DNA of 64,000 nt from Oculina patagonica (Eukaryota): the NCBI RefSeq assembly GCF_052425735.1, contig NC_135770.1:6014001-6078000 (forward strand), in the 5' to 3' direction. Positions 31,568 to 60,313 of the stretch are shown here, piece after piece. The notes under the pieces were generated by a model, which saw only the letters and a list, made by a program, of their open reading frames with translations, was not told where the DNA came from and searched no databases. The translations under genes and the position numbers were made by a program. Numbering within the stretch: position 1 is the first letter of the stretch; each line of letters begins with the position of its first letter.

Positions 31568-32755
31568 ATGAGCAACAATTCGACTCAAGTGGCCCCGACG
31601 TCCGTCCCCGCTCCACAAGTTCCTACTCTGCCTCATGGCGAAGTGGAAATAATAGCTTCAACCGTGGTGTACATTTTGCTGGCGTTGTTTGTAATTCTTG
31701 GAAACACTCTTGTGATCGCAGCTTTCAGATTTAATTCAAGACTTCGCACCATCAACAACACTTTCCTGGTAGGCTTGGCCATATCGGACCTCTTGGTAGG
31801 GCTGATATCGATTCCACTCTGGATTTATTTCTCGTCTTGCCAACAGCATTTGACATGCGTCGATAGTCAAGAGCTACTAACGTTTTATTCAACAGTGGAT
31901 ATTTTTACGGGCTGCGCCTCTGTTCTACAGCTTACGGCCATCAGCATCGAGCGGTATCTGGCAATAACTCGCCCGATAAACCATCGATCATACTCAATGT
32001 GGATTTACTACGCCATGATTGCTGCCGCGTGGGGCTTCGCTTTCATCATAGCCGGACTCTTTCCCGTGCAGTTAAACAAGTGGCAGAAACCTTACAGTAT
32101 TATTCTCTTCACGACGTGTTTTGCCCTCCCAGCGCTGGTAATACTAACTGTTTATGCGATCATTTTCCAGACAGCAAAAGGAACTTCGCGAGCGAGGGTC
32201 CATCCTGAAGGAACAGCAAAGAGCCCCGCGCAAAACGAAGCCAAGATCGCCGCCACAATTGCGGTCATTACAGGTCTCTTCGTGATCGCATGGCTTCCGT
32301 TTTTCGTCGTCAATCTGATAGCGCAGTTTTGCTTGCCCTGCTTACCACCCTACCCTGACGTATTGAGACTGATTCGCTTCGTAAAGTGGATGCATTACTC
32401 AAACAGCATGGTTAACCCAATGGTGTATGCTTACCGCAACGGCGAGATGCGGAAAACGTTCAAGCGGCTGCTGCTAATCTGCCTCTGTTGCCGCAGTGGC
32501 GGACATGGCAATTTTCAAACGTCCTACAAGACTGCGCAGGCCGCGAGAACTAGAAACGTTGTCGCGGGGCATTCAAAAAGCAACAGGGATCTTCGCAACG
32601 GCAGCGACATGTCGAGACGGAGAAGTGCACCTGTGAGCAAATCTGTCGAGAACAAAGGGGTCGATACGAGGTCAAGCGCCAAAGACGATTCCTTTCGAAA
32701 TTGCCCGTTTTTAACCCCTCACCACGCGGAGGTACACGCATCAGAAAAACTTTGA
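31568..32755 (+). CDS. GPCR2: class A aminergic-like orphan receptor, 395 aa
   Basis: The ORF track starts at a TTG (31556); the first in-frame ATG is 31568 (aaaaATG, MSNNST). Motifs GN, LAISD, D3.32, ERY, AWLPFF, NPMVY. Acceptor ttttgtcttttag at about 31497. Confidence 0.95.
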   Translation: MSNNSTQVAPTSVPAPQVPTLPHGEVEIIASTVVYILLALFVILGNTLVIAAFRFNSRLRTINNTFLVGLAISDLLVGLISIPLWIYFSSCQQHLTCVDSQELLTFYSTVDIFTGCASVLQLTAISIERYLAITRPINHRSYSMWIYYAMIAAAWGFAFIIAGLFPVQLNKWQKPYSIILFTTCFALPALVILTVYAIIFQTAKGTSRARVHPEGTAKSPAQNEAKIAATIAVITGLFVIAWLPFFVVNLIAQFCLPCLPPYPDVLRLIRFVKWMHYSNSMVNPMVYAYRNGEMRKTFKRLLLICLCCRSGGHGNFQTSYKTAQAARTRNVVAGHSKSNRDLRNGSDMSRRRSAPVSKSVENKGVDTRSSAKDDSFRNCPFLTPHHAEVHASEKL

Positions 32756-33245
32756 TAACTAGCTTTAAGAAAAAGAATCTTATGAGCTATCTTAGCAAAG
32801 TGTTTTTTGGTAAAGCAGTACCTCGGAGCCGTCAACTATTATCGTGAGAAAAAGTTGCTAACCCAACGGTAGAAGTCCCTTATTAGTGTTTAAACGGAGT
32901 ACTTGATGTTAATCAGGAGTACCGTACATATTGTACCTCACTTTTTGCTTTGGTTTGAGGCTGCAATGGAACACCAAAAGATGCCTAAATATAGTCGAAG
33001 GAGTCCTAAAAACTAATAGCTTAATATTTATCAGTAAGGAAGGGAAACACTAAAAAGGTGATAATACACTAATATTGAAGAAGGACGACTAAGAATTGAA
33101 AAGACTTACACCGATTTCGAACGACAGACTTAAAATTTTAGTTTTTTTGCAAAACGTGGCTTCCGTGACGTAGTTCGTCTCATTACAAATGCATTTTGAC
33201 GTGCTAATTGCCTTTAAAACTTAATGTAGTGTTGCTCATTAATTA

Positions 33246-33707
33246 CCGTAATGATTCGATTTAGCGCCCTCCTTCCAATAAGCGCCCCATTCCGAATAAG
33301 CGCCCCCCTTCGAATGTGTTTTTGTAAATAAGCGCCCCTATTCCAATAAGCGCCCCCATTCTTATTAGCGCCCCCATTCTTATAAGCACCCCTATTCTAA
33401 TAAGTGCCCCTATTGTGGATAACTGGCCCTACTGAAGTCACTGATGTCAACTAGATAAACTCCTGACCGTTCACCGTACAGTTCATGTAAATATTTACTG
33501 TTAAAATGAAGAATTATTTTAAAAGTAACTGAACTTTTAACAATTTTTAACTGTTACAGTTCCTGTTATTATAAGATACATTTGGTTGTTTCTCAAAAAA
33601 TTAAATAAGCGCCCTGTCCCGAATAAGCGCCCTATCTCGAATAAGCGCCCTCCCTTGAGTTGCCAAAAGTAAATAAGCGCCCCGGGCGCTAAATTGAATC
33701 ATTACGG
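33246..33707. mobile_element. MITE, Tc1/mariner-type
   Basis: TIRs ccgtaatgattc(g/a)atttagcgccc, TA TSD, about 11 internal aataagcgccc repeats. Confidence 0.9.
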
Positions 33708-34085
33708 TAACTGTTTTAACAAAAATTCATCGAAATGCTTTTGCATTGACGTGTTAATATATAATGAAATTTTCCACCTTCTCACACAAGAGCCGTTAAT
33801 GTCATTATTTCACTTAACATGTGCATTGTACTAGGCATTGATTGAACTCTGTGTTTTGAACATTTTAGCAAGTACAGTGGGTCACTGAGTGGTCCCCTGA
33901 TGTTCAGAGGTGGCCGCTCAGTAGAGATACAGAAATATAAATGATAAACGCAAATATAACATAAGAGAGGCAGTCTCACTTGAAAACAATAATTAAAAGT
34001 GGCTGTTGAGGTAGCTCACAACAATCCAGACCTTCTTGTCTTTGGCATTCTACCATCTCTCCTGGGGAAACACATTAAATGTTCA

Positions 34086-36559: not shown

Positions 36560-36734
36560 CAGTTGAATCCCGATAACTCGAACCCTCAATAACTCGAACC
36601 TCTCGCAAACTAGAACCTTTTTCGATTCCCCTTCAAGTCATTTCTTACTAATTTTGCCCTCGATTACTCGAACACCCGATAACTCGAACCTTTTTCGATT
36701 TCCCTTGAAGGTTCGAGTTATCGGGATTCAACTG
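36560..36734. mobile_element. MITE, pogo/Tigger-type
   Basis: 25-bp perfect TIRs cagttgaatcccgataactcgaacc, TA TSD, internal taactcgaac repeats. Confidence 0.92.
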
Positions 36735-37113
36735 TATAGTAAACTGTCCTTAATATTACTCTTATTTATCGAATTGTAATTCAATAATTCATGATCAGTA
36801 TTGCGATATTCATAAAGACCTTTCAGTACATACAAACGGATTGTTAGAGCCAAAAAGTACTGCGTTTTGTACAAGTAAGAGAGAATGGTTTTGTACTATT
36901 TCAAGGACATGTTTAGCAGTTCTGGCATATTTGTCAACTTAATTTGTAATTGTTGACATTAAAAACATGTTTTTAAAGAACAGCTTTAGTTGTATTGCAT
37001 GCAGTTTAGATTGTTCAAGTTTGATAACATCAATCGTTCAGCAAACTACTTATATATATATCTTTATATAAAAACGTTTAAGATGTCCATTTTGAATGTC
37101 TAACATTAGTTGC

Positions 37114-38052
37114 TTAGATAAAGTCCTCGGCTGGTTGGTTTGGTGAAGATGATCGGTGTCTTTGGTCAGTCTTTCTGATCCCAATCAACTTCAGAACACT
37201 TCTTCTCATTTGTCCATGTCTAAACACATAAACCAACGGATTTACAGCACTGTTTGAGTAATGCATCCACTTTACGAACGCAACTAATATAGCTACACCA
37301 TCCCCTTTTGGCAAACAACTCCCACAGAACTGAGCAAGCATTGAAACGACAAAAAACGGCGACCAGGCGAGTAAAAATAGCCCTGTTACAATACTAACTG
37401 TTACGGCAACTTTTCGTTCTTTGCGCACTCTGTTATCAATGGACTCTGCTGTTTGAATGCTGGGAGTTTTGCGGATGAGTAAGCGGGCTGTTCGAAAGAT
37501 CCTCGCGTACATTATAAACATCAGAAACGCCGGTAACGCGAAGCCGACAGTAAAAACGACAACTGTGTATACAGTTTGAATCGCAGCGGTCAACTTGTTA
37601 ACCTGGGAAAGCGCGGCCATTATCGCTGCAGTCAGCCACGAGGCAATAACCATGTACTTGTAGACACCGAACGACAGTGCACCATAGTCAAAGGGCTTCG
37701 TGATGGCGAAGTATCGCTCAAAAGAGATGGCGGTAAGGTGAAAGATTGAAGCCAAGGCACTGAATATGTCAAGACACAAATAAAGATCGAACAAACCAGG
37801 CGGGGCATTCAGGTAGTTGACAAACGTGAGATAAGTCCATATCGGCACGGACACACCCCCGACCAGTAAATCCGAGACAGCCAGGCTAACGATAAAGATG
37901 TTTGTACGAGTTTGAAGACGTGCATTCGTTCGATACGCCGCTATAACAAGAGAATTTCCCGCGATGATGAGGACAGCTAGTGCCACTGAAAACACCAGCA
38001 AAACGTAAGATTCCGAATGAGAAGGCTTAGGAGGCTGGTTCGTTGTGTTCAT
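37114..38052 (-). CDS. GPCR3: class A aminergic-like orphan receptor, 312 aa
   Basis: GN, LAVSD, D3.32, ERY, AWSPFF, NPLVY; N-terminal NTT sequon. Confidence 0.95.
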   Translation of the reverse strand: MNTTNQPPKPSHSESYVLLVFSVALAVLIIAGNSLVIAAYRTNARLQTRTNIFIVSLAVSDLLVGGVSVPIWTYLTFVNYLNAPPGLFDLYLCLDIFSALASIFHLTAISFERYFAITKPFDYGALSFGVYKYMVIASWLTAAIMAALSQVNKLTAAIQTVYTVVVFTVGFALPAFLMFIMYARIFRTARLLIRKTPSIQTAESIDNRVRKERKVAVTVSIVTGLFLLAWSPFFVVSMLAQFCGSCLPKGDGVAILVAFVKWMHYSNSAVNPLVYVFRHGQMRRSVLKLIGIRKTDQRHRSSSPNQPAEDFI

Positions 38053-39149
38053 CTCGATATGTAATGAAGTTATTCCTCACCAGTTAGTCTTAGCATGTGC
38101 ACACAGTTCCTGCGCCTTGCGCTTTGGTATTTTTTCGTGAATTATCTTCCAAATTTCTTTCGGATTACAGAGCAAATCAGAAACCAGTGAACACTGTAAT
38201 GTTGTTAATTTGGATATGTAAATTTTTGTAGAAAGCTATCAAATGACAGCTCAGACAGCAGGAAATATTTAAACAAACAAACGCGTAGTGACGGAGCCAC
38301 TTGGTTATGTCTTGCAAATAATTTGTCTCAGCTCAGTACTACTTTTTCTTTTCTCTCTTCAATAGTATAACAACACTGTACACGGTAGTCAACGGTTTGT
38401 GCACGATAACACTGAAATTTAAGAAATGTGAAAGGACTTTCCTCACGATTCACTGACGATTAATGTTGTATCTGATATCCGGCGAAATTCGAATCACCCT
38501 CCTACGAGAAAGCAGCGACTAGTAACCCTCTATAATGTGGTTTTTCTTGTTTCGCGAGTCTATTAATTATAACATTGTTATTAACCGTTTGGCGGCTCTG
38601 GCGAAAATGTACTGTTTGCACGAAATGCAAAGATTGAAGATGCTTGAATGAAACACAGGAAATCAACATTGACACTTGTGCCTAATATTTATAATTTCAG
38701 TGCTCGGATTTGTGCTTTTAACTTAATGAATCATGATGTTTTGTTGTGTCTTTTTGCGAAATTTTCGCTTTCAAATCAAAATTTCATGAAAAGTTTGTTT
38801 TACCATGTTTACCTAGGTTTGGTAATGACAAGGAAGAAATGTGGAATCTCATTAAATATGTCTTCGATTCGGATTCACGGCACTCATGATTGCTTTAATC
38901 AAAACTTGCTTATACCGGAACTAGCATGCTCTTTATGTATTTCAATTATAAGCGAGAAAGCAAACGCATGCAAGTGAACAAGGTAAAGCTACCGTCGCAT
39001 TTATCCTTACATGTCTTACATGTGTTTGTTAATGTGGGTGCCATCTGATCGATTAAGATAATCGATTAAGATACCAAAATCATTCTAAGAATTAGAAAAA
39101 TCGCTAAATGAAAATTAAGTAGTCGCCAAATTTTGGGCCAAGTTTCGTA

Positions 39150-39322
39150 ACACCGGTGCCCGCAGTTCTCACGCACAACGCAGAAAGCGCGGGATTTTTC
39201 CTATCAACCCTTTCCAGTTCTCACGCGCACAGCGCTGTCGCACAACGCTGAAAGCGCGGGAATATTTCGTGGCCACCGGTGCCAGCTCTCAAGTATCGTA
39301 GAACGCGGAAAGCACGGAAATG
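39150..39322. repeat. Three degenerate GC-rich tandem units of about 50-65 bp
   Basis: cag(t/c)tctca...aacgc.gaaagc.cgg three times; caccggtgcc twice. Confidence 0.7.
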
Positions 39323-39677
39323 TTTTGCGGCTGAAGTCGAGAGCCGATTTCACATGAAAAGAAGAAACTGTAGTTGAGTATTTTCTTATTGTCGCAAAAA
39401 TGTGAGCTGTAAATTTACCTTTATGCTATTACAATTCCGGGATGTTATTATCCCTAAACGTTCCAGCATAACTTTACATTCAGATGCACTAAAAGCAAGA
39501 AAAAGGTGAAATTTAATGCCAATTTTCACTCCCAGAAAAGCAGATTTTTTACAATAGAAAAAACTAAAAAAGAAGAAGAGAACTTATGTAACCATGCATT
39601 TGCAACGATTTTTGGTGATAATAAGCAATTAAACATCTATACGTATTTCGTATTTAAAACTCCTAAAGGCAGAAAAA

Positions 39678-42600
39678 TTAAGAAAACTGGTAATTTTGAA
39701 AATTTAAAGGAAACAGTACTTTGTTGTGAAAGTAATCTTCCAAAAATAGATCAACGGGTCTCATGACCAGGTACTTATAATGCACAGTGTCATGCTCCTT
39801 GTAATGGGCGACCTCAGGTCCCCCGGTACCACCTGGATAGGACCTCGTAAATGGGTAAACATCAAGGACCTCTAAGCCAGCTCGGCACATAAGGGACGTG
39901 GCAAAGGCGTTGTAAAGTCTCACTCGCTGAAAAGAAACAAAATAACACCGATTCAGAAACGTCTGCGCCAATCGAAGGAGCTGTTTAGAAGGTATAGCTT
40001 ATTTTTAAAATATTTTTTAGTATTGCTATTACCCCTGGATGAGAAGCTAGTCCGTTCATCGCAAGGAATCCTCAATATTTTTGTCAGGTAATATCCCGAT
40101 GTGGTGAGGGTTACTCATGGGTGCGGACGTGATAGGGGGTGGGGGAAGGGGTGTAGGATACCATATCTTGGGTAAATTGTAAGGTCTTGCTCATGGAGAG
40201 CAAAATAGGGAGGACTGTGTAAGGGAAATTAAATGTTAACTATACACGAAGGTCTTCAACATGGAAAGCCATATGTGAGAGCCAGGGGTGTAAGAGGAAT
40301 ATCTCACGGAGAAGTTTAGGAGGTTTTACAAAACATGTACCAAATATGCTCAAAATTTCCGTTCAAAATCATGCAAAATGCCAAAATTTTGAAAAAAACT
40401 GTATACTTAACACTCACAATCGGCCCATTTTTTGTCTCAAAATACTGTATACTCGATTTAAAGTCCCCCTGTATACTGCATACCTAAAACTGAACCCTGG
40501 CTGACTCTGATCCGACCGTGTAGGAGGAATATCTACCTGAGAAACTAAACACGGAGATTTTGATCATGGATGGAGCAGAGAAGGCGGAGCAAGGAGGGGT
40601 CAGGAGTACATGAAAGGTTAAAGAAGGGACTATGTTGAATGGAGGAAAAGGGGAGGGTCGAGGAGGGGGAGGCTGGAAATTATTTTTACTGACTTTTCTT
40701 ACCGGTAAGTTTAGAAACCGTTGCCAATCGCTCCTTAACCGGCTTCCAATGTCTTTCTCCTTGCACATAGATGTTGTAGTTCTCCAAATAACACGTGTTT
40801 TATACTTCAAGTCACCAGTGTTCGCGTCCCTTTCATTCAAAAGATCTACAACTCCATTCATAAGGCGCTGATAACCCTCCAAGCTTATGCTTTCGATATA
40901 GTGCAGGCCCAAATTTAAAATCATCACACTATTTTCACTCATGTCAGGGTTTTCCAGGACTCCTCGAATAAGATCTAGGACTTGCTGGTGGTCAAAGTCC
41001 TTGTCATCCCAGCCTATCGGTTGTATGCTCGGCCAAGCGTAGGCCCACATTTTAGTCAGATTACAAGTTTTAAAGATATCTTTGCATAGCGGTCCATCCT
41101 TTATGCGCATGTACATTCTTTCAGCCAGCGAGTCACCGACAATCCATAATTTTTGTAGTTTGGTAGCGGATGAATTTTTGTGCTTAGAATTACTTGAAAT
41201 TCCTGAAAATAAATAGAGCAGTGTGAGATCATAAATATTAGATTATAATTATTAGTTAGTGGAGTAAAAATGCCACATAAACGAGTAGTTATTCGCATTG
41301 CAGTTTGTATTTGTACGCGTGCGTAATGAGGAAACTCTAGATTTTTAGCCGTGATAAGAGTTGCCATGGAACCACTTTGTCTGATTTCTAGTCCGTTTAC
41401 TATCTTTGTTTTGGTAGTATTATCTTGTAGTTTTCTATCTTGTTTTGTCGAGTTTGAAGGTGATTTTCTTTAACATCTCAAAAAAACGGACAACCAACAA
41501 TCTCCATTTTTTCTCGAAAATATGTACGGATATTTGTCTTTACTGAAAGGTTTTTTGAGAGCAAGGCTCAAGAAAAACTTACTGTGAGTTTAAAAGAATA
41601 AATCCGTACTGTTTCTTGAAGCCGAGCGGAGGCTATTTTATGTTTATTATCCTTCGAATAGATTCCCGTCGGGGACTCAGATTTTTTTCTTTGTCCCACT
41701 CGTGTCATGTAGAATAATTTCTTCACTATTTATCACCGAGCTTAAATTATTTACTGCAAATTTGATGATTTCGACATTGCTGATCCTAGCAGTATGCAGG
41801 ACGCGTGTCACTTATCAACCTAGTAAATGGCCTAGCTCACAGCGAGTCTCACGTAGCTCAGTTGGTAGAGCGCCCAACCGGAACTGGGAGGCCATGGGCG
41901 ATTCCCGTCGGGGACCAGATTTTTTCTTTGTCCCACGTTCGTGTCATGTAGAATAATTTCTTCACTATAAGTTCATAGTTACCGTATTTTTTACATTCTT
42001 GTCAATTTTGAAATTTCACAAACGTTTTATTAATTTCAATTACTATTTTAGCGACTTTGTACTCACCTTTAAGAAACGGCTTCCAACTTTTTCCGTGCCA
42101 ACGGCCAAAGCCATCCCACATGAATTTACATTTAATACCACAAGACAAATCAAAGCCATAGGAAACATTTGAACTTTCGGCACTCGTGGATAGCCTGCTT
42201 ATTAAATCTGTTCCTGGGAATATAAAATAACACAAAATATCAACAATGTAGTCGCATCATGTAGTGTAATTGAAGCTTTTGTCAATAACAATGATGCATG
42301 CACTGACCAAATAAGTAAAGCCGGTAGCGATACTTGTGATTTTACTACTGTTGTTCAATTTGTAAAGTGACAACTTGAGAATTGAGGTTGATTGAAAAAT
42401 CATTAAAAAAACAACAACAACAACAAGCTTTATTTGCATGACTATAAGTACATACAGTATTGCAAAAGCGTAAAACTTAACTAAACTTATATCAAATCAT
42501 AATAATGTATTAAATAGTAAAAAATAAAACAGTTACGTATGTGTTACATCACTGTCATTCTATAGAAAATTACTTCGTAAAGATAAGCATCCAGTCAAAA

Positions 42601-46399: not shown

Positions 46400-46557
46400 T
46401 AATCTTCCACTAAAAAGTTATAAGACTATAAGCACAAATATTGCTTTGAAAAAACTCAATTACATTCAAACAACAAAGACTGTTACCGTGGAAATTCAAC
46501 CTATTTACAGGGCACGCCTGTTGTGTTTGTACAGTTCTGTTCTTTGATGTCATAGTC

Positions 46558-46602
46558 AAGTTCTCAGCCTATATTTTGCCACAAAATATAGGCTGAGAAC
46601 TT
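46558..46602. repeat. Perfect hairpin, 21-bp arms, 3-nt loop
   Basis: aagttctcagcctatattttg-cca-caaaatataggctgagaactt. Confidence 0.95.
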
Positions 46603-46774
46603 CAACGCACAAAAAAAAGGAAAATGTGAAACCTCATCTTAAGCCTTGTTTGTTTGTCATATCGAATAGAGGCGAAGCCGGTGACAGACATTTTTTTTGA
46701 TTCATTTTTTTGTCTCAGTTTTAAATTTTGTCCAAACTAGTGAGAAAAAAAATTGCTCAATAAGACGTTTTTTT

Positions 46775-47010
46775 CGCTCAATCCCTGAAGAAGGTCTGTG
46801 TTTCAAACCGAAATATTGGTCAAATTTGTTTAAAATATTTAGTTGTTTAATCTATTTTGTTTATTTTTACTTGCGTACGCCGCGAGGATCAGTCTGCCGT
46901 CAATATGTTGCGTTTTAACTAATTAACTGATCCAGGTCTTCAAGAGATCCGCCATCACTCTTTGGTTTGTCGCTGTGATCTCGCAGATTTTTATTACATT
47001 TTGAATTTTG
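46775..47010 (+). mobile_element. Penelope-like terminal-repeat remnant with a minimal hammerhead-like motif (about 46783-46819)
   Basis: cc-CTGAAGA-aggt...acc-GAAA-ta-TT-gg; resembles PLE-associated minimal type I hammerheads. Confidence 0.5.
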
Positions 47011-47761
47011 TTTACATTATTTCCCTTATTAGCATAAGCGCTTCAGTTTCTGATCGAGCTACAAAAAAAATCAGTTATGAATATTAAGTAAAGACCATGA
47101 CACGTTTAACTTCTGCTATAAATTTGAGCCTGTTGTATTAAATCCTTTTTCTTTGACGCGGGTTTGAAAACTCAAAATTTTACAAAGAATGTATGGGCTC
47201 ATAAGCGCTTTTGCCTCCACAAATCTTTGCAGTTTTTTAATCTCCTTCAATATTTCATGTAAAGAGCTGAAAATTTCGCCGATTATTAAGTTTCATAAGA
47301 TCTCTAAATTTCTGGAGTTATTTTGGATATAGCAGGATGATTTTTTTACGTAAAGGCGTATGCTAATGTAAAATGTAATGGCAAAATGTAACCAATAACG
47401 TCGGAAAAGATCGCTTTATAGTTAAGTTAAATTGTTGAACGCCGACCAGTCAAAACACACATTCCTTAGAGACAGAAACTGGCATGGCCGCTGGCCGACA
47501 ACCCCCTTCTTTGCTTTTTTGCCACGAAAAGAATTAAAATGCGCTTAGAGCAAAACTGAGAAAATAATCCAAACAAAGAAAAAAAAAAACAAAGAGTAGT
47601 AGAAAAAACAAAAAGCGTGCTCGGTAAATGAGTTAAATTACTATGGTGACAGTCTTTGTTGTTTGAATGTAATTCAGTGTAATTTTAATACAATATTCTT
47701 GTAAAGAGCGAAAAATATATTATTATAACCAACTTAGTCAGTGGGAGATAAACGGTTTCAA

Positions 47762-50700
47762 ATGATCCAATTCCTGGTTCGGAAGTGGAAAATTTTTCTT
47801 AAATTATGGTTGTCAGCCGTCGCAATTCAAATCATTTTCTATCAATGTTTTAGCAACGAAGGGAAATCACAGCATCTCGAGAACTCGATGAGAATTTCGC
47901 ATCATATCGATCACTTTCAAGAAAACTGGTGTCGTATTCGTCGGGCCAGAGTAGACTTGGACTCGTTGTTAAAACCTTGTTTTTACAACATCTCGTGGAA
48001 CAGGGATTTACCGAATCGAAAGTTACAAACGGATGCAGCCAAGAGTTTTATTTCGCACTTTGACATCAGACCCGCGGGTCAGTTCAGTCGCTTTTGCATT
48101 CAAACAAAGACTAGCGATGGCAAACTGAAGTTCATTGGCGGCGACTCGTGGCGTGTTTTGCTACGCGGTCCGGCCACCGTGTCGCCCACTACGTTTGATC
48201 ACGGCAATGGAACATACGAGTTTTTGTTTTTAGTTATGGACCCAGGGGTCTATAAATTGGATATCACCCTGGACTATAGCTTATGTGATGGGTACCGTGA
48301 TCCTCCGAAAAATTGGTTTATAGTAGGTAAGCGAAATATTCTTATTCTTTTCATTTTACAACAAAGCGAAGAAATTACAGTTTTTATCGTTCGTTCTCTT
48401 ATTGAGAGAGATAAATCGTTTAATCCGAAAACAACACTTGGAAGTCTATTTGACTGAATAACGTGCTCAAAAAATTACAAAAAGTAACACATATGCTAAT
48501 AAAGACAATATTCGATAAGTAACGAAAACCCTACATTTGGCGACAAAAGTATCCACCGTAGTTGAAACACTTTTTAGAAAATGACTCTAAACGATATCCC
48601 CCAACTCTACTTAAAGTGCATTTGAGGATGATTCTTTCGATTAATATATTCTTCTTTCGATTCAGTCCTCCTTACTCTATTCTGAGCGACATGCGAAGGA
48701 CTTCAAATAAATGCCAATATGTCCAGAAAAAAGTTTCTGTGGCTGATTGCAGGTTATCGAAGTTTGCGCTAACAACAATTATTACATGATCAAAGGTCTG
48801 ATTAATGCAAAATCTACATAAACTCGTTGAAGATCAAGTTGTCAGGAGGTATTTGTTTGTTGATAAACAATCAGTGAATTTGAAAGGTCTTTAATCTCTA
48901 ATAACGTAAGCTTGAGGAAATCTCTTCGTTCTGCCATCCATACAACACACCATCTACGATCCGCGATCTGTAATGTGAGGCGTCCGCCCAGACTTTGAAA
49001 GTATCCTTCCTCGGTACTTAGAAATAAAACTTTTAACTGACTTGTTATTGTTTTGTAAAGGAAATTCTCAAGGCAAAATGCAAAAAGATGGCACGCTTGG
49101 CGTAAACCGTGCAAAAGATGATTATCTCCTTCAGCCGTTCCAGGATGGTAAACTTATCATGATCAATATACCGCTGCCTAGAGATGGAGGTATGCCGAGA
49201 CTTTTTCAAAATTCAGTGAAAAAAAAAAGAGATTCAGTGAGAGAAAAAGAGATCAGCTGAAGGCCCAATTGGAGGGGAGAAGGCTCGCCTTATCTTTATA
49301 TATAAGTGGTTAAAGTACTTTCTCTAGAGATGTCATCACCATCGGAAGTTTTAGTAATAATTATTGTGTTGTCTTTGTCTGTACGATATGTAAAATAAAC
49401 CTGCATGATGGAAGGGCCGTAGAACGAAGGAAGAAGTTTCAATGACACTATCTCAATTCCAGCATCGTGCTGATCGACATAACCGTTTTGGTCTCTCTCC
49501 GAGATTCTGATACCTTTAGCAAACTTTGCAACGACCATAACGCTGGGACAACTTTGACGCTGACAAAGGGCAAAATGTTAAGAACACGCTGGCTAAGAGC
49601 GTAAGAACCCAAGTAAGACGTTTACTTTTATCTTTCTGTTGTATAAATTGCAAATTAAATAGACGAACTGCCAGAATCAATACTTTTTCAATTCCAACGT
49701 GGAATCACCCGTCAGTGACGTAAAGTGTTTAATTTGAATACGTTTGAATGCGAATGATATATTTAAAGCTATGTTCAATATTGAAGAAAAAGAACGTTTC
49801 GGATTAAAATCGTCTCAAATTTGGATCATGTAGACTTGGCTCCAATAGTACATAACCCGAAGTCACCGAGCCTATGGTCAAGTGAAATTTCAACGGATCT
49901 ACCGTAAGCACTAAGTGAAAGGGTTTCTTTTTGATTCTCATGTGATTCTGATTTTTCCCTTATTCTCTCCACAGGCGCATTTTTACTAAACCGGTTGCCA
50001 GACCGTTCCTGTCTGTCTTCCAAGTTTGACTTGTCCTGTGGTATTAAATGTAAATATATGTGGGATGGATACGGTCGTTGGCTTGGGAAAAATTGGAAAC
50101 CGTTTCTTACAGGTAAATCTGTTTTGTTTCTTGTAGTCTCTTAATAGTTTTTCAGCCTCAAAACAAAACAAAAAACAACAACAAAAAACTAAACAAACAA
50201 AACAGAACTCGCGTTTTACCGTGGTAGCAGCAGTTTTAATGATAAAACACTTAAACTCGTTTTGTTATACGTGCAACTAAAAATACTCTGTTTTTCGAAG
50301 TTTTTTAAACATCACCCATTCATAATTTGGTCGCACACAGATTGATCACGCGTGAAACCAGTATTCAAGCTGTTGTTTGTTTCCCATGGAGTTACACACA
50401 TGTACACAGTTTTGTTGCCCTGGAGAGCCTTTTGAGGTTTGAGGCGTGCCACTTGATCAGTCGTCTAATCAAAAACCGCGTTTTGGTTGCGGGATAAAGG
50501 AATTTATACCACGCCATAGAAAATACAGCCAATCAGGAAACAGGAAAGCCGTTGTATATTCGACGGTATTCAACCCAACCTTCCCATAGTGCGCTGCGAC
50601 TGTATTCTCGACGAAATTTAGTAAGCGTATTTTCTATGGCGTGGTATAAAATAGTTACACAACACTTTCTCGTGGTTTACTATGGAATATCCCACTTGTC

Positions 50701-51103: not shown

Positions 51104-51136
<33 letters not shown>

Positions 51137-52774
51137 TAGACAGAAACATTAAAAATGTAAAAACCAATTTTAAGCAGCATCCGCTAAAAAGGATTTTAAT
51201 GCAGACTTTTGGGTAAAAGGGTTCATAATTGTACACTATATTCATTACTAATTTAATACTTACACTTATTTATCATTTTACACTAATTTATTATTTCCTC
51301 TCAGGCATTCCAAGTAAACCCAAACAATTCGGGATCGACTTTTCTAGGCTAGAAACCTTGTGGATATACGGAGACTCACAGGCCGAAAGACTTCACTTGT
51401 CCATTAAGGATGGACCTCTGTGCACAGAGATCTTTAAATCCTGCAACCTAAGTAAAATGTGGGTGTACCCTTACCAAGGACAAGTACCACCCTGGGACGA
51501 CAAAGACTTCGATGACAAAATAATCCTTGATCATCTCAGAGAGGTACTTGAGAGGCCCGAGATGAACAAGAATAGTGTATTGATTTTGAACCTTGGACTT
51601 CACTACATGGAGAGTGTCACTCTTCAGGATTATCAACTACTTATTAAGAGAGTCACTGATATTTTGAAAGAAAAGGACAAAGATACCGGCGAATTGAAGT
51701 ATAAGACACGTGTTATTTGGAAAACCTCGACTTCAATAAGCAAGGAAAAAGACACCGCAAGCCAGATGAAGAGTGATCGGCGACGATTTCTCGCGTTACC
51801 AGTGAGTAAAAAAAGAATTATTTCCTTTTGCCAGTTGTAAGGCAAACAGAGGCGATTATCGTCAGGTTTCTGAAGTTTCGTCAAACTTCAGGCTGAGCTC
51901 TTTGACGTCACGCATACATTACCAGCTCCAAGATGGCAGCGTTCAAGTTGTCGAGTTTTGGGAAAGATTTCGTAGGTTTATAGCGTACGTTGGAGGCTGA
52001 AATTTTGGTGAATAACATATCTTTATATAAACTTTTTATTAGCGTAAAGAAAACAAATGGCCATTCTGGAGTGAACTTCTCCTTTAACCCCTAACCACGT
52101 TACAGATCCGAATATTTAATTGTCGCACCCCAACACCTAACTGTTTGCTCTTTCTAAGCCATAAACGCGAGAATCTATACCCCAAAGGATGTGCCAAATC
52201 AGCTGAAAAGACACAATGTACTCAATTCTAGTCCAGAGCAATGAAATTTAAGACTAACGCAAAATCTTATCACCAGGGCTTTGGTGAAAAAAAAGGGAAG
52301 CGATATATACGCAACTGAAAAAAATACCGCAAGGCTGCATACCTTGCCTCAGACTCATAATCCCTCGTATTCTGTTTTCTCCCCAAGGTCTAACTTAAGC
52401 CGGTCTGGTTTACAATAAAGTCGAGAAAGAGAGAACCATTACCCTGTCTAACTCCGTCTGCTTGATGTGCTCGTCGCTTAAGGTGTCTGATTTAGTCGAT
52501 TTACTGTTTTTTTTTTCTTTTTCAGCGTGTGACTCTTTACAATTCCTTCGCCACGTCCCTTATGTGCCAGGCTGGCTTAGAGGTCCTTGATGTTTACCCA
52601 TTTACGAGGTCCTATCCAGGTGGTACCGGAGGACCCGAGGTTGCGTATTACAAGGAGAATGACATTGTGCATTTCAAGTTTCACGTCATGAAGGCTCTCG
52701 ATCTACTTTTGGAAGATTTCATTCACGGCAAAGTACCTTTTCCTATCGATTTTCAAAATTACATGTTTTCTTAA
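47762..52774 (+). CDS. NXPE-B: paralogue of NXPE-A, 525 aa. Exons 47762-48326, 49061-49189, 49975-50112, 51305-51801, 52526-52774.
   Basis: Same intron positions and phases as NXPE-A; 1578 nt open frame. Motifs GGDSWRV, DHGNGTY, LWIYGDS, LNLGLHY, DIVH. Confidence 0.88.
50502..50783. repeat. Double-hairpin palindromic non-autonomous element in NXPE-B intron 3
   Basis: tttataccacgccatagaaaatac / gtattttctatggcgtggtataaa (24 bp perfect), plus a second long imperfect hairpin tactatggaatatcccac...gtgggatattccatagta. Confidence 0.85.
51008..51145. repeat. (GACA)n microsatellite
   Basis: Imperfect agac/gaca tetranucleotide run. Confidence 0.95.
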
Positions 52775-55037: not shown

Positions 55038-56049
55038 ATGACGGCGTACTCGCCAAACAACTCAAGCAGGCTGAAAAACGCCACTGAAGAATGGCAGGCC
55101 AATGTATTTCCTCTCCGAGCAATTCTGGCGCCCTACCATCTTTCTTGCAGTTGTGATCTTAATTGGCAATTCTCTGGTCATTTTATCTTACAAGACCAAC
55201 AAGCGACTGAGAACTCGAACTAACGCGTTTCTCGTCAGTTTGTCGATCTCGGATTTCCTGGTTGGAAGCATATCTCTACCGATGTGGATCTACATTCTCA
55301 TAAAAGAGTTCAGCGAATCCGTCGCTTTCAATGCTGTTTTCAGAATTTTTGATGTTTTTGCAGCTCTTGCGTCCATTTATCATTTGACCGCCATAAGCAT
55401 CGAGCGTTACATTGCTGTTTCTCGACCGTTCTATTACAAATGTTTGCCGTCGTTCTTTCACCGAGCGATGATAGCTTCTGCCTGGTTTGTCGCTGGCCTT
55501 CTAGCGTCCCTTTCTTCTTTAACAATTGTCCTGAAAATCTCCTGGATCAGCCAAGTCTACTCCACGGTCTTGTTCATTTGCGGGTTCGCCGTCCCCACCG
55601 CCATAATAGCGTGTATGTACGTTGGAATCTTTTCAGTGGCACGTTCTCTTCTTCAGCGCAATCCACCCCGCCACACGAGTCAGGAGAGCGCGAGGAGCTT
55701 GACGCAGTACTACCAGGGACAGAGAAAGGTCGCTATCACTGTTGCACTCATTACAGGCTTGTTTATCGTGGCATGGGTGCCGTTTTTCACGGTGTCGGTC
55801 ACAGCTGCATACTGCATCCATTGCCTTCCTTCCTCGCCAGACTCCCTCAGAGGTCTGGTTATCATCGTCAAGTGTGTACATTACCTAAACAGCGCTGTCA
55901 ACCCACTTGTGTATGCGCGCCGTGACCGTGAAGTGAGAAGGACATTTATAAGACTGCTAGGGCTGAAGAGAGGTATTTTTGGATTTGGTGGAGAGGAGGA
56001 AACTCCGTGGGGATTTCCACTACGACCTCAGTCATATAATGTAACTTAA
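55038..56049 (+). pseudogene. GPCR4: class A aminergic-like receptor with a +1 frameshift at 55131-55133. Could be a pseudogene, a sequencing error, or a gene rescued from ATG 55102.
   Basis: ORF 55038 (MTAYSPNNSSRLKNATEEWQANVFPLRAILAP) matches the GPCR5 N-terminus, and ORF 55102-56049 matches the rest of GPCR5 in another frame. The sequence gcg-ccct-acc versus paralogue gca-cct-tcc shows one extra C. Confidence 0.85.
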
Positions 56050-57259: not shown

Positions 57260-57291
<32 letters not shown>

Positions 57292-57479: not shown

Positions 57480-57522
<43 letters not shown>

Positions 57523-58991: not shown

Positions 58992-59175
58992 CCAACACTT
59001 AACGTGCAAACGGATTCCATCCGCGCTAAGGTGTTCGTTTAGGCTGTTCATTGTTTTATGCTTATTTTGTAGCGTTCCTTATTTGCATACTGTACAAGTC
59101 TCTTGAAAATGGAGTCAAGATGACTCCGAAACGTCGAGCAGTATTAAATCTTTCTTGGTTCTTCTTATTTTATTG
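58992..59175 (+). mobile_element. Penelope-like element 3' remnant with a variant hammerhead motif (59100-59138)
   Basis: PTLNVQTDSIRAKVFV* resembles the C-terminus of a PLE GIY-YIG domain; then ctc-TTGAAAA-t-ggagtc-aagat-gactcc-GAAA-cg-TC-gag. Confidence 0.75.
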
Positions 59176-59311
59176 TTATATTGCTGATTATGAAATGTTA
59201 AAACGTGAAGTATATTGCTGGATACCGCCTGACATCGCCTGCGAGGTTGCAGCACGTGACTCCAGTTTTCAGCCAATGAGGGCGCAGAACTGGAGCACTA
59301 ACATTTGCATG

Positions 59312-60313
59312 TTAATTTCTAGGCCTCAATGGAAATCCCCACGGTGTTTCCTCCTCACCATTGAAACGAAAATTACCTCTCTTCAGCCTTAGCAGTCTGA
59401 TAAATGTCTTTCTCATTTCACGGTCACGGCGCGCATACACAAGTGGGTTGACAGCGCTGTTTAGGTAATGTACACACTTGACGATGATAATTAGACCTCT
59501 GAGGGAGTCTGGTGAGGAAGGAAGGCAATGGATGCAGTATGCAGCTGTGACCGACACCGTGAAAAACGGCACCCATGCCACGATAAACAAGCCTGTAATG
59601 AGTGCAACAGTGATAGCGACCTTTCTCTGTCCCTGGTAGTACTGCATTAAGCTCCACCTAGTGCTTTGCTGACTCTTGTGGCGGGGTGGATTGCGTTGAA
59701 GAAGAGAACGTGCCACTGAAAAGACACCAACGTACATACGCGCTATAATGGCGGTGGGGACGGCGAACCCGCAAATGAACAAGACCGTGGAGTAGACTTG
59801 GCTGATCCAGGAGATTTTTAGGACAATTGTTAAAGAAGAAAGGGAAGCTAGAAGGCCAGCGACTAACCAGGCGGAAGCTATCATTGCTCGGTGAAAGAAC
59901 GACGGCAAACATTTGTAATAGAACGGGCGAGAAACAGCGATGTAACGCTCGATACTTATGGCGGTCAAATGATAAATGGACGCAAGAGCTGCGAAAACAT
60001 CAAAAATTCTGAAAACAGCATTGAAAGCGACGGATTCGCTGAACTCTATTATGAGAATGTAGATCCACATCGGTAGAGATATGCTTCCAACCAGGAAATC
60101 CGAGATCGACAAACTGACGAGAAACGCGTTAGTTCGAGTTCTCAGTCGCTTGTTGGTCTTATAAGATAAAATGACCAGAGAATTGCCAATTAAGATCACA
60201 ACTGCAAGAAGGACGGAAGGTGCCAGAATTGCTCGGAGAGGAATAAAATTGGCCTGCCATTCTTGAGTTGCGTTTTTCAGTTCGTTTGTGTTGTTTGTCG
60301 AGTTGGCAATCAT
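59312..60313 (-). CDS. GPCR5: class A aminergic-like receptor, 333 aa, near-identical inverted paralogue of GPCR4
   Basis: First in-frame ATG at 60313 (caaaATG, MIANSTNNT), preceded by acceptor ctctttgtcttcag at about 60337. Motifs GN, LSISD, D3.32, ERY, AWVPFF, NPLVY. Confidence 0.93.
   Translation of the reverse strand: MIANSTNNTNELKNATQEWQANFIPLRAILAPSVLLAVVILIGNSLVILSYKTNKRLRTRTNAFLVSLSISDFLVGSISLPMWIYILIIEFSESVAFNAVFRIFDVFAALASIYHLTAISIERYIAVSRPFYYKCLPSFFHRAMIASAWLVAGLLASLSSLTIVLKISWISQVYSTVLFICGFAVPTAIIARMYVGVFSVARSLLQRNPPRHKSQQSTRWSLMQYYQGQRKVAITVALITGLFIVAWVPFFTVSVTAAYCIHCLPSSPDSLRGLIIIVKCVHYLNSAVNPLVYARRDREMRKTFIRLLRLKRGNFRFNGEEETPWGFPLRPRN

What the first reader, a model, noticed from the sequence alone, without database searches (positions are those of the whole stretch)
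31568..60313. Mirror-symmetric GPCR-NXPE cluster: a duplicated receptor plus acyl-modifying enzyme module
Seen: gene order GPCR2> <GPCR3 <NXPE-A | NXPE-B> GPCR4> <GPCR5, a gene-level palindrome around about 47.1 kb. Each NXPE is followed 1.6-2.3 kb downstream by a co-oriented receptor. GPCR3 is closer to GPCR4/5 (ALASI.HLTAIS.ERY, RKVA.TV, TRTN.F.VSL) than to GPCR1/2 (GCAS.LQLT, YAYRN.EMR), as expected if NXPE+GPCR duplicated as one inverted unit. Known: PC-esterase/SGNH proteins (NXPE, CASD1, plant TBL) add or remove O-acyl groups on glycans in the secretory pathway. Inference (speculative): an enzyme-receptor cassette retained together and possibly co-expressed, for example in mucus or surface chemosensing, where the enzyme shapes the ligand or the receptor's glyco-environment.
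Basis: partly seen in the sequence, partly recalled or inferred. Interest (0 to 1): 0.75.

Follow-up and report, generated by a model that had tools for sequence, protein, structure and literature searches.

The report
Ancient coral NXPE-like enzyme–receptor gene cluster
Two head-to-head copies of an NXPE-like sugar-acetylating enzyme gene, each followed by an amine-receptor-like GPCR gene, form a real mirror-image cluster in this coral, and the enzyme–receptor neighbourhood is also found in other corals and in sea anemones, but whether the two proteins work together is still untested.

Summary
The window, from Oculina patagonica chr C13, carries G2> <G3 <NXPE-A | NXPE-B> G4> <G5, with spacers of 1.6 and 2.3 kb.

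**The enzyme genes.** Both have 5 exons. They encode an N-terminal membrane anchor, a filamin-type Ig domain and an SGNH/PC-esterase domain with invariant GDS and DxxH. A confident model (pLDDT 90.8) matches vertebrate NXPE1-4 over its full length. Pfam finds no NXPE domain.

**The receptors.** They are aminergic-like class A GPCRs.

**Conservation.**
- Desmophyllum has the same six genes in the same order and orientation.
- Stylophora has NXPE-A> G3>.
- Actinia, Nematostella and Actinostola have G2> NXPE> <GPCR.

The linkage is therefore ancestral to hexacorals.

**Duplication history.** NXPE-A/B arose in stem scleractinians. G3 groups with G4/5 rather than G1/2 (99/97). An exclusive G3+G4/5 clade is unresolved (AU p=0.42). 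Anemones lack a GPCR between G2 and NXPE, which favours one inverted NXPE+GPCR duplication.

**Gene conversion.** It has homogenised NXPE exons 1-2 and the G4/G5 pair.

**Expression.** RNA contigs show NXPE-A spliced, its introns empty, and the NXPE-A–G3 spacer transcribed.

Functional coupling remains speculative. The scan's note s1-310927 had already recorded the mosaic divergence of the two NXPE copies on this same stretch.

The parts
19438..20634 (+). G1, an intronless class A GPCR and an outlying member of the local receptor array
   Evidence: PF00001 E 1.7e-35. It falls outside the G3/G4/G5 clade.
31568..32755 (+). G2, an aminergic-like GPCR and the ancestral upstream neighbour of the NXPE-like gene
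   Evidence: PF00001 E 3.8e-41. Its orthologue (66% identity) sits directly upstream of, and co-oriented with, the NXPE orthologue in Actinia. In Actinostola it is fused to the NXPE orthologue in one gene model.
37114..38052 (-). G3, an aminergic-like GPCR lying 1.6 kb downstream of NXPE-A and co-oriented with it
   Evidence: PF00001 E 1.3e-44. Best solved relatives are beta-1 adrenergic, 5-HT1A and D4 receptors. Orthologues at 64-71% identity hold the same position in Stylophora and Desmophyllum. RNA contigs cover it.
38053..39677 (-). Spacer between the NXPE-A stop codon and the G3 start codon; transcribed
   Evidence: In run X1, RNA contigs cover it at depth about 5, with two holes of 7 and 119 nt. 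NXPE-A introns have depth 0. There is no similarity to the NXPE-B/G4 spacer, and only short conserved blocks against Desmophyllum.
39678..39926 (-). NXPE-A exon 5, with the DxxH catalytic motif and the stop codon
   Evidence: Spliced joint 39926|40703 with GT..AG ends on the minus strand, in two runs. tblastn against P0170. D and H are invariant in 40 homologues.
40703..41201 (-). NXPE-A exon 4, the SGNH/PC-esterase core with the GDS motif
   Evidence: Joints 39926|40703 and 41201|42066. The translation shows the GDS motif. Identity to NXPE-B exon 4 is 57% at protein level, with saturated dS of 1.86.
42066..42214 (-). NXPE-A exon 3
   Evidence: Joint 41201|42066. tblastn against P0170 gives 100%.
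43451..43594 (-). NXPE-A exon 2 (bounds approximate)
   Evidence: tblastn against P0170.
45824..46399 (-). NXPE-A exon 1, with the N-terminal hydrophobic anchor and the filamin-type Ig domain
   Evidence: ORF. Filamin E 3e-6. A 19-residue window has Kyte-Doolittle mean 1.62. It is 88.7% identical in DNA to NXPE-B exon 1, with dS 0.20.
46400..47761 (.). Divergent intergenic region between the two NXPE start codons; the symmetry axis is near 47.08 kb
   Evidence: The inverted similarity extends about 130 nt upstream of each ATG: 45821-46528 against 48331-47604.
47762..48328 (+). NXPE-B exon 1
   Evidence: ORF. tblastn against P0171 gives 100%.
49048..49191 (+). NXPE-B exon 2 (bounds approximate)
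   Evidence: tblastn.
49974..50114 (+). NXPE-B exon 3 (bounds approximate)
   Evidence: tblastn against P0171 gives 100%.
51295..51801 (+). NXPE-B exon 4, the GDS esterase core (bounds approximate)
   Evidence: tblastn against P0171 gives 99.4%. The GDS motif is in the ORF translation.
52511..52774 (+). NXPE-B exon 5, with the DxxH motif and the stop codon
   Evidence: tblastn and the ORF translation.
55102..56049 (+). G4, a GPCR 2.3 kb downstream of NXPE-B and co-oriented with it; its N-terminus is shifted by a 1-nt insertion
   Evidence: PF00001 E 2.9e-39. The alignment with G5 shows the insertion and the out-of-frame ancestral ATG at 55038. The Desmophyllum orthologue holds the same position.
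59312..60313 (-). G5, the inverted partner of G4
   Evidence: 91.6% protein identity to G4, dS 0.15, omega 0.35. The pair is also present in Desmophyllum, yet the two copies group by species. This indicates gene conversion.

Best explanation
The region is a scleractinian elaboration of an old hexacorallian neighbourhood.

**What the genes are.** One gene encodes a type II membrane protein with a filamin-type Ig domain and an SGNH/PC-esterase domain. This is the architecture of vertebrate NXPE proteins, so it is probably a glycan O-acetyltransferase or esterase. It is flanked by aminergic-like class A GPCR genes.

**History.**
- The ancestral order, still seen in sea anemones, was G2> NXPE> <GPCR.
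- In the stem of stony corals an inverted duplication produced the head-to-head pair NXPE-A|NXPE-B.
- That duplication most parsimoniously carried the downstream receptor with it, giving <G3 <NXPE-A NXPE-B> G4>.
- G4 and G5 form a second, nested inverted pair.

**Gene conversion.** Since then, gene conversion between inverted copies has kept NXPE exons 1-2 and the G4/G5 coding regions nearly identical within each species. The catalytic exon 4 and G3/G4 have diverged to saturation.

**Why the block is retained (inferred, not shown).** The likeliest cause is interleaved or shared transcription and cis-regulation. The spacer between NXPE-A and G3 is transcribed. A biochemical enzyme–receptor partnership is possible but untested.
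For: **Gene identities**
- establish the ORFs and exon models.
- One search shows invariant GDS and DxxH.
- One search gives a model with pLDDT 90.8 and pTM 0.91.
- the 11 best Swiss-Prot AFDB matches are all NXPE1-4, over residues 12-468, with E about 1e-15 to 1e-16.
- a filamin domain (Z 14.5) plus XOAT1 (Z 14.1), PatB and GDSL folds.
- One search supports a hydrophobic N-terminal anchor.
- the best solved relatives of G3 are aminergic receptors.

**Conservation**
- Desmophyllum has <G3 <NXPE-A NXPE-B> G4> <G5 G6> with 2.3-kb spacers on both sides.
- Stylophora has NXPE-A> followed 3.8 kb later by G3>.
- Actinia has G2> NXPE> <GPCR.
- Nematostella has the same arrangement plus a further GPCR.
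- Actinostola has a fused G2+NXPE gene model.
- Cnidarian microsynteny is generally poor (PMC10719294).

**Timing**
- In the NXPE tree the anemone and octocoral sequences are outgroups and the A clade has 100/100 support.
- Exon 4/5 identities follow orthology, and Montipora is B-like.
- The G3 group includes Montipora.

**Unit duplication**
- G3 lies in a clade with G4/5 and away from G1/G2.
- Holding G3+G4/5 together costs 0.18 lnL, p-AU 0.42.
- There is no GPCR between G2 and NXPE in anemones.

**Gene conversion**
- Exon 1/2 A-B identity within a species is 94/93% in Oculina and 98/98% in Desmophyllum, at or above the identity between orthologues.
- dS is 0.20 in exon 1 against 1.86 in exon 4.
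- G4/G5 and the Desmophyllum pair each group by species although their positions are conserved.

**Transcription**
- Spliced joints at the predicted exon borders, introns at depth 0, and the spacer and G3 at depth about 5.
Against: - G3, G4/5 and G6 groups form an unresolved polytomy, so sisterhood of G3 and G4/5 is not demonstrated.
- G3 and G4 are only 42% identical with saturated dS, so a pre-scleractinian origin of G3 cannot be excluded.
- The two NXPE-to-GPCR spacers share no detectable sequence.
- One coral contig (L058) has G3> upstream of two NXPE-like copies. Order and orientation are therefore not invariant.
- No NXPE-A orthologue from a Complexa coral was recovered, and the Complexa loci could not be fetched.
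- The RNA evidence comes from assembled contigs without strand information. It cannot show a single read-through molecule. Two poly-A libraries showed no reads on these genes.
- Pfam finds neither the Neurexophilin nor the PC-esterase model.
Confidence: 0.7

Rival explanations
1. Only the NXPE gene duplicated, in inverted orientation, inside a receptor array that already held G3 on one side and G4 on the other. On this view the mirror symmetry of the receptors is a coincidence of orientation.
For: - G3 and G4 are far more diverged (42% identity, saturated dS) than NXPE-A and NXPE-B overall (75%).
- The GPCR clade is a polytomy.
- The spacers share no sequence.
- The coral contig L058 shows G3 on the other side of NXPE.
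- Given a flanking array, matching orientation has a prior of about one half.
Against: - Anemone outgroups have nothing between G2 and NXPE, and Actinostola even fuses them in one model. G3 therefore had to arrive in the coral lineage, just as NXPE-A did.
- NXPE exon 4, the part not homogenised by conversion, is also saturated (dS 1.86). The overall 75% identity therefore understates the age of the NXPE duplication.
- The spacers are 2.3 kb on both sides in Desmophyllum.
- The AU test allows G3+G4/5 as a clade.
Confidence: 0.25
2. The block is a functional enzyme–receptor cassette. The NXPE-like O-acetyltransferase and its neighbouring GPCRs are expressed in the same cells, partly from read-through transcripts. 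The enzyme modifies glycans on the receptor, or on its ligand or surroundings, and selection on that partnership keeps the genes together.
For: - The adjacency is retained across corals and anemones even though cnidarian microsynteny is generally poor (PMC10719294).
- A paralogous NXPE-like gene 0.96 Mb away is also followed 3.1 kb downstream by a co-oriented receptor of the same clade.
- The NXPE-A/G3 spacer is transcribed in the libraries that express both genes.
- Human NXPE1 is a cell-surface sialic acid O-acetyltransferase (PMC12216134; bioRxiv 10.64898/2026.05.20.726592).
Against: - There is no expression data by cell type, no strand-resolved or long-read transcript, and no biochemical data.
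- About 17 of about 21 NXPE-like loci in this genome have no close receptor of this clade nearby.
- Receptor orientation relative to NXPE differs between anemones (convergent) and corals (co-oriented), and differs again in L058. This argues against an obligatory read-through unit.
- The receptors carry aminergic ligand-pocket residues, which suggests small-molecule rather than glycan ligands (and inspection of the alignment).
Confidence: 0.15
3. The adjacency arose by chance: an NXPE gene happened to land in one of the many receptor arrays of a receptor-rich genome.
For: Rhodopsin-type receptors are very numerous here, with about 4,000 first-look candidates. Both families expand by local duplication on the same chromosome arm.
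Against: Orthologous genes are neighbours in at least six species from two orders, including orthologues of G2, G3, G4/5 and G6 in matching positions.
Confidence: 0.03

Closest known systems
Vertebrate NXPE1-4 (FAM55; neurexophilin and PC-esterase domain family). NXPE1 is a sialic acid O-acetyltransferase of colonic mucin.
   Same: - N-terminal membrane anchor, a beta-sandwich N-domain and a C-terminal SGNH/PC-esterase domain.
- Full-length structural match at E about 1e-16.
- Conserved nucleophile Ser in GDS and catalytic His.
- The nearest solved relative of the esterase domain is XOAT1, as reported for human NXPE1.
   Different: - Only 13-17% sequence identity.
- Pfam Neurexophilin and PC-esterase models do not match, and the N-domain scores as filamin-type Ig.
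- A DxxH aspartate is present, whereas human NXPE1 is described as a Ser-His dyad without it.
- The substrate is unknown.
- All public names are 'uncharacterized protein'.
Plant TBL/XOAT1 and animal CASD1 glycan O-acetyltransferases (PC-esterase/SGNH superfamily)
   Same: GDS...DxxH Ser-Asp-His arrangement and Rossmann-like SGNH fold. XOAT1 6cci matches with Z 14.1 over 220 aligned residues.
   Different: The coral protein has no multi-pass acetyl-CoA transporter domain of the kind CASD1 has. It carries an extra N-terminal Ig domain, and sequence identity is about 10%.
Aminergic class A GPCRs (adrenergic, dopamine, serotonin, trace-amine, muscarinic)
   Same: They are the best solved relatives of G3, at E 1e-34 to 1e-26. 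The alignment shows Asp at 3.32, Tyr at 7.43, Trp at 7.40 (G2, G3), E/DRY and NPxxY.
   Different: Lys at 7.39 in all five receptors, very short N- and C-termini in G3-G5, and Cys at 7.40 in G4/5. The ligands are unknown, and cnidarian expansions of this group are not orthologous to any single bilaterian amine receptor.
Inverted-repeat gene pairs kept alike by gene conversion (for example palindrome arms of sex chromosomes)
   Same: Within-species paralogues are more alike than orthologues for NXPE exons 1-2 and for G4/G5, although the pairs predate speciation.
   Different: Conversion tracts are short and limited to exons or the coding sequence. Introns and spacers are not homogenised, so there is no long sequence palindrome.
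Conserved microsyntenic blocks of unrelated genes (genomic regulatory blocks with bystander genes)
   Same: Unrelated gene families are kept adjacent over very long times.
   Different: No conserved non-coding element or shared enhancer has been identified. Only short blocks upstream of the receptors are conserved between two corals. Cnidarians are reported to lack TAD-like constraints.

Membership tests
NXPE (neurexophilin and PC-esterase domain) family | N-terminal transmembrane or signal-anchor segment | tested here: met
   A 19-residue window in exon 1 of both genes has a Kyte-Doolittle mean of 1.62-1.65. It lies upstream of the start codon of the deposited models. No dedicated TM predictor was run.
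NXPE (neurexophilin and PC-esterase domain) family | Neurexophilin-like beta-sandwich N-domain recognised by sequence (Pfam PF06312) | tested here: not met
   There is no Pfam hit even at E up to 10; only Filamin PF00630 matches, near its threshold. A family profile hits solved human NXPE1 (9pja_B) at E 3.3e-4 in the Ig region only, among filamin domains.
NXPE (neurexophilin and PC-esterase domain) family | Overall two-domain fold shared with NXPE1-4 | tested here: met
   Ranks 1-11 in AFDB Swiss-Prot are all NXPE1-4, covering model residues 12-468, with E 2.7e-16 to 9e-15 and TM 0.49-0.56. The next hits are filamin domains alone at E about 1e-6. Both sides of the comparison are predicted structures.
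NXPE (neurexophilin and PC-esterase domain) family | Orthology to vertebrate NXPE genes, meaning a common origin to the exclusion of other PC-esterase families | not tested
SGNH / PC-esterase superfamily | Block I GDS nucleophile and block V DxxH | tested here: met
   G258, D259, D447 and H450 are invariant and S260 is at least 90% conserved in 40 homologues. Both motifs are intact in NXPE-A and NXPE-B.
SGNH / PC-esterase superfamily | Three-layer alpha/beta/alpha SGNH fold | tested here: met
   XOAT1 Z 14.1, BT3161 Z 14.2, and GDSL lipases, PatB and OatA at Z 11-13.
SGNH / PC-esterase superfamily | O-acetyl transfer or esterase activity | not testable with these tools
   This needs a recombinant enzyme assay.
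Aminergic-type class A GPCR | 7TM rhodopsin-family profile with E/DRY and NPxxY | tested here: met
   PF00001 E 1e-35 to 1e-45 for all five receptors. The motifs are visible in the alignment.
Aminergic-type class A GPCR | Asp 3.32 and Tyr 7.43 of the amine pocket, with aminergic receptors as nearest relatives | tested here: met
   Counting back from R3.50 and P7.50 in the alignment gives D3.32 and Y7.43 in G1-G5. All the top solved relatives are aminergic receptors. The numbering was done by hand.
Aminergic-type class A GPCR | Activation by a biogenic amine | not testable with these tools
   This needs receptor deorphanisation.
Read-through or co-transcribed gene pair | Single RNA molecules spanning both genes | tested here: inconclusive
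   Run X1 contigs tile from NXPE-A exon 5 through the spacer to G3, with two small holes, while introns are empty. Contigs show neither strand nor single molecules. No spliced NXPE-to-G3 joint was seen.
Conserved microsyntenic block | Orthologous genes adjacent in distantly related species | tested here: met
   Oculina, Desmophyllum, Stylophora, an unnamed coral contig, Actinia, Nematostella and Actinostola. Orthology is supported by trees.

The most novel reading that the evidence does not exclude
The NXPE-like O-acetyltransferase and its flanking aminergic-like receptors form a functional module that has been kept together since the hexacoral ancestor. On this reading they are co-expressed in one cell type, partly by read-through transcription. 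The enzyme would tune receptor signalling by O-acetylating glycans on the receptor or in its surroundings. The inverted duplication in stony corals would then have copied the whole module.
Probability: 0.15. Interest if true: 0.75.

Novelty: new member of a known kind. Interest (0 to 1): 0.42.

Why it matters
**Naming the family.** The result gives a name and a probable chemistry to an anthozoan gene family. The family has about 20 loci in this genome, and every public annotation calls its members 'uncharacterized'. It resembles vertebrate NXPE proteins, and human NXPE1 was only recently shown to be a sialic acid O-acetyltransferase.

**A rare conserved block.** It documents a rare case of a multi-gene neighbourhood retained between sea anemones and stony corals. 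Microsynteny in this phylum is reported to decay quickly.

**Gene conversion.** It provides a clean example of exon-limited gene conversion in two nested inverted gene pairs. Such conversion can mislead dating of duplications: G4/G5 look young but predate the Oculina–Desmophyllum split.

**A testable question.** If the linkage reflects co-regulation or a biochemical partnership, Nematostella has the same block. There the question can be tested with existing single-cell atlases and knockouts.

Tried and rejected
**Sequence and profile searches that found nothing**
- Pfam at E up to 10 found no Neurexophilin or PC-esterase domain in P0170, P0171 or P0183.
- The Foldseek PDB search did not list solved NXPE1. 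The sequence profile reached it only weakly.
- Rfam found nothing in 30-62 kb.
- Literature searches for NXPE with Nematostella or coral found nothing relevant.

**DNA comparisons**
- Self-blastn and a sensitive blastn of the two NXPE-to-GPCR spacers found no similarity. A recent sequence palindrome was therefore rejected.

**Loci that could not be fetched**
- Exact-protein look-ups failed for Oculina P0307, Stylophora P0175, Montipora P0219 and P0319, and Dendronephthya P0324. Complexa and octocoral synteny therefore stayed untested.
The second cluster at 6.99-7.05 Mb was therefore read only from the 3.4-3.9 kb loci already held.

**RNA evidence**
- The first request for sequencing runs failed and was repeated.
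- Two poly-A raw-read libraries gave no reads on the genes, only on repeats.

**Readings considered and rejected**
- G4/G5 as a young duplication. The pair exists in Desmophyllum.
- G2/G5 as true mirror partners. They belong to different clades.

**Not attempted**
- No complex prediction was run, because no claim of physical binding is made.

Full report
**Observation**

The window is G000:C13:6014001-6078000. The deposited Oculina patagonica proteins ACROYT_G039784 (P0170) and ACROYT_G039785 (P0171) match its exons at about 93-100% (four of the five at 95% or more). The window therefore comes from that coral or a near-identical genome.

Five intronless ORFs are rhodopsin-type receptors, with PF00001 E values of 1e-35 to 1e-45:
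- G1 19438-20634 +
- G2 31568-32755 +
- G3 37114-38052 -
- G4 55102-56049 +
- G5 59312-60313 -

Between G3 and G4 lie two five-exon genes, head to head. NXPE-A runs from 46399 down to 39678 on the minus strand. NXPE-B runs from 47762 to 52774 on the plus strand. Exons were placed by tblastn with homologues and with P0170/P0171. For NXPE-A, spliced RNA joints at 39926|40703 and 41201|42066 confirm two of the borders.

The spacers are 1,625 nt (NXPE-A stop to G3 ATG) and 2,327 nt (NXPE-B stop to G4 ATG).

Four corrections apply:
- The mirror exists at gene level only. Self-blastn aligns exons (e1 88.7%, e4 68%, e5 84%) and the G4/G5 coding region (91.7%). It does not align introns or spacers.
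- G4 carries a 1-nt insertion relative to G5. This puts the ancestral start at 55038 out of frame.
- A further receptor, G6, lies just beyond the window end. It equals ACROYT_G039786.
- G2 and G5 are not homologous mirror partners.

**What the genes are**

*The enzyme family.* It is restricted to cnidarians in the searches, mostly anthozoans, and every public name is 'uncharacterized protein'. Pfam sees only a borderline Filamin repeat.

An alignment of 40 members has invariant G-D at the GDS motif, with the Ser at least 90% conserved. It also has invariant D and H in a DxxH motif. This is the Ser-Asp-His arrangement of SGNH/PC-esterase enzymes. Both window genes keep these motifs.

An AlphaFold model of NXPE-B is confident, with mean pLDDT 90.8 and pTM 0.91:
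- Its 11 best matches among Swiss-Prot predicted structures are all vertebrate NXPE1-4. They cover residues 12-468 at E about 1e-15 to 1e-16. The next matches are isolated filamin domains at E about 1e-6.
- Against solved structures, the N-domain is a filamin-type Ig fold (Z 14.5).
- The C-domain matches XOAT1 (Z 14.1), GDSL esterases, sialic acid esterase and the peptidoglycan O-acetyltransferases PatB and OatA.
- XOAT1 is also the nearest solved relative reported for human NXPE1 (bioRxiv 10.64898/2026.05.20.726592).

The first exon of both genes starts with a hydrophobic stretch (Kyte-Doolittle mean 1.6 over 19 residues). It lies upstream of the start used in the deposited models. This fits the N-terminal anchor of NXPE proteins.

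Human NXPE1 acetylates sialic acids of colonic mucin (PMC12216134). The label 'NXPE-like' is therefore supported by architecture, fold and catalytic residues. It is not supported by sequence-family membership, and orthology to vertebrate NXPE was not tested.

*The receptors.* The nearest solved relatives of G3 are beta-1 adrenergic, 5-HT1A, D4, trace-amine and muscarinic receptors, at E 1e-34 to 1e-26. They look like amine-type receptors, not an obvious chemosensory class.

**Relations inside the genome**

- The enzyme family has about 21 exon-4 matches, most of them on C13 in clusters at 4.46-4.49, 6.05-6.07, 6.99-7.02, 9.0 and 29.7-30.0 Mb.
- The 15 closest receptors are all on C13 between 4.77 and 7.05 Mb.
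- In the receptor tree, G3 falls with G4/5, G6 and three other C13 copies (95/95). G1 and G2 fall in the sister group.
- NXPE-A and NXPE-B are each other's closest paralogues (100/99).
- A second cluster at 6.99-7.05 Mb again mixes the two families. It includes a paralogous NXPE-like gene followed 3.1 kb downstream by a co-oriented receptor.

**Other species**

- **Desmophyllum pertusum** (loci L053 and L057 on contig MU827857.1) has the same six genes in the same order and orientation. There are orthologues of G3 (71%, not called as a gene), NXPE-A, NXPE-B, G4, G5 and G6 (87%). The spacers are 2.3 kb on both sides.
- **Stylophora pistillata** has an NXPE-A orthologue followed 3.8 kb downstream by the co-oriented G3 orthologue at 64% identity.
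- **An unnamed coral contig** (L058) has G3> followed by a partial and then an A-like NXPE copy. Adjacency holds there but the order differs.
- **Actinia tenebrosa** has a G2 orthologue (66%)>, then NXPE>, then a convergent G6-group receptor within 2-3 kb.
- **Nematostella** has the same core plus another G6-like receptor.
- **Actinostola**: a deposited gene model fuses the G2 orthologue and the NXPE orthologue, so they are adjacent and co-oriented there too.

Cnidarian microsynteny is reported to be poorly conserved, and blocks of three or more genes become rare quickly (PMC10719294). Retention of this block between two hexacoral orders is therefore notable. By my background knowledge of published clocks, those orders have been separated for roughly half a billion years.

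**History**

*NXPE duplication.* In the NXPE tree the octocoral and anemone genes are outgroups to a scleractinian clade. Within that clade, NXPE-A orthologues from Oculina, Orbicella, Desmophyllum and Stylophora form a 100/100 group. The B copies, and the one Montipora gene, form an unresolved grade.

Identities by exon show two regimes:

| Comparison | e1 | e2 | e4 | e5 |
|---|---|---|---|---|
| Oculina A vs Oculina B | 94% | 93% | 57% | 76% |
| Desmophyllum A vs Desmophyllum B | 98% | 98% | 61% | 78% |
| Oculina A vs Desmophyllum A | 93% | 89% | 73% | 87% |
| Oculina B vs Desmophyllum B | 92% | 93% | 69% | 87% |

- In exons 1-2 the two copies within a species are as similar as orthologues or more so.
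- In exons 4-5 the identities follow orthology, and Montipora is B-like.
- Synonymous divergence agrees: 0.20 in exon 1 against 1.86 in exon 4.

The duplication is therefore old, at least predating the Robusta radiation. If Montipora is a true B orthologue, it also predates the Complexa-Robusta split. Gene conversion near the symmetry axis has since homogenised the 5' exons.

*The G4/G5 pair.* The same process explains G4/G5. The inverted pair exists in both Oculina and Desmophyllum. Yet each species' two copies are sisters (100/99 and 97/89), with dS of 0.15 in Oculina.

*Was the receptor copied with the enzyme?*

Evidence for:
- G3 groups with G4/5 rather than G1/G2.
- The G3 group (10 scleractinian sequences, including Montipora) and the G4/5 group (9) are both coral-only clades on long stems.
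- Forcing them together costs 0.18 log-likelihood units, p-AU 0.42.
- Anemones have no receptor between G2 and NXPE. G3 and NXPE-A must both have entered that interval in the coral lineage, and one inverted duplication of NXPE> GPCR> explains both.

Evidence against or unresolved:
- The clade is a polytomy that also contains the G6 group, which has anemone members.
- G3 and G4 are only 42% identical.
- The spacers share nothing.
- L058 shows a different order.

I put the unit model at roughly even to slightly better odds. NXPE-only duplication stands at about one in four.

**Expression**

Two assembled runs of the same species label are RNA-derived. They contain the NXPE-A exon joints with GT..AG ends, and NXPE-A introns have zero depth.

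In these runs:

| Feature | Depth |
|---|---|
| NXPE-A exon 4 | about 25-42 |
| NXPE-A exon 5 | about 13-44 |
| G3 | about 3-6 |
| 1.6-kb spacer (run X1) | about 5-11 |

- In X1 the spacer has only two small holes.
- In X2 the stretch 38370-38960 is missing.

This shows that the spacer is transcribed and that both genes are expressed in the same samples. It does not show a single read-through molecule, the strand, or the cell type. Short collinear blocks conserved with Desmophyllum lie just upstream of G3 and G4, which may mark the receptors' own promoters.

**Verdict**

- The mirror-symmetric cluster is real and old.
- The enzyme–receptor linkage is ancestral to hexacorals.
- The symmetry is maintained in part by gene conversion.
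- The proposed single inverted duplication is plausible but unresolved.
- The proposed functional partnership is untested.
- No paper in the library describes cnidarian NXPE-like genes or this cluster.

This is a new, well-conserved example of known phenomena: a microsyntenic block and inverted duplicates with conversion. It involves an unannotated family. It is of moderate interest, and would be of higher interest if co-expression or a biochemical link were shown.

Noticed in passing
window 55038-55223: G4 has one extra base relative to G5 near codon 32 of the ancestral frame. The upstream ATG at 55038 therefore opens a 61-codon dead-end frame. The receptor frame starts at 55102 without an extracellular N-terminus. 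Omega between G4 and G5 is 0.35, so it is not an old pseudogene. It may be a young defect, an assembly error or a tolerated truncation.
   Followed up: partly
G000:C13:6078513-6079343 (just beyond the window end; locus L027): A sixth receptor, G6 (+), equals the deposited ACROYT_G039786. Locus tags run G039784 (NXPE-A), G039785 (NXPE-B), G039786 (G6). G4 and G5 therefore seem to be missing from the deposited annotation.
   Followed up: partly
G000:C13:6.990-7.047 Mb (loci L006, L008, L025, L028, L029, L032): A second mixed cluster lies about 0.96 Mb away, arranged as <NXPE-like <GPCR <GPCR | NXPE-like> GPCR> GPCR>. It has paralogous members of both families. It includes another NXPE> GPCR> pair with a 3.1-kb spacer.
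   Followed up: partly
window 45824-46399 and 47762-48328: The deposited protein models for both NXPE-like genes start at an internal Met (window 46264 and 47888). They omit about 40 upstream in-frame codons that contain the hydrophobic anchor.
   Followed up: partly
window 41522-42112 (NXPE-A intron 3) and 36400-36800: A satellite-like repeat with a period of about 258 bp. It has more than 2,000 first-look candidate places across all chromosomes, at 85-92% identity. RNA contig depth on it is very high (hundreds to thousands).
   Followed up: partly
L052:1999-5500 (Stylophora pistillata LSMT01000001.1): The Stylophora NXPE-A orthologue shows an internal tandem duplication of exon 3 plus the start of exon 4. 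Exon 3 matches occur at 1999-2163 and 3907-4071, and the exon 4 start at 2992-3132 and 4901.
   Followed up: no
protein P0339 (Actinostola sp., QZH41_004715, 716 aa): A deposited gene model joins a complete G2-type receptor (residues 14-372) to an NXPE-like protein (residues 376-710). It is either an annotation merge of neighbouring genes or a real read-through product.
   Followed up: partly
L058:11637-14551 (ENA ERZ25067868 contig ctg79140): A partial NXPE-like copy, with exon 1, exon 2 and an exon 5 fragment but no exon 3 or 4. It sits between the G3 orthologue and a fuller A-like copy in an unnamed coral assembly.
   Followed up: no
window 23478-24187: A direct tandem duplication of about 355 bp at 77% identity. 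Also an inverted pair, 9300-9561 against 18679-18435, at 73% identity. These are probably transposon remnants.
   Followed up: no
window 6049-6564 (-): A 171-codon ORF with ankyrin repeats (Ank E 3e-16). It is probably one exon of a larger gene unrelated to the cluster.
   Followed up: no
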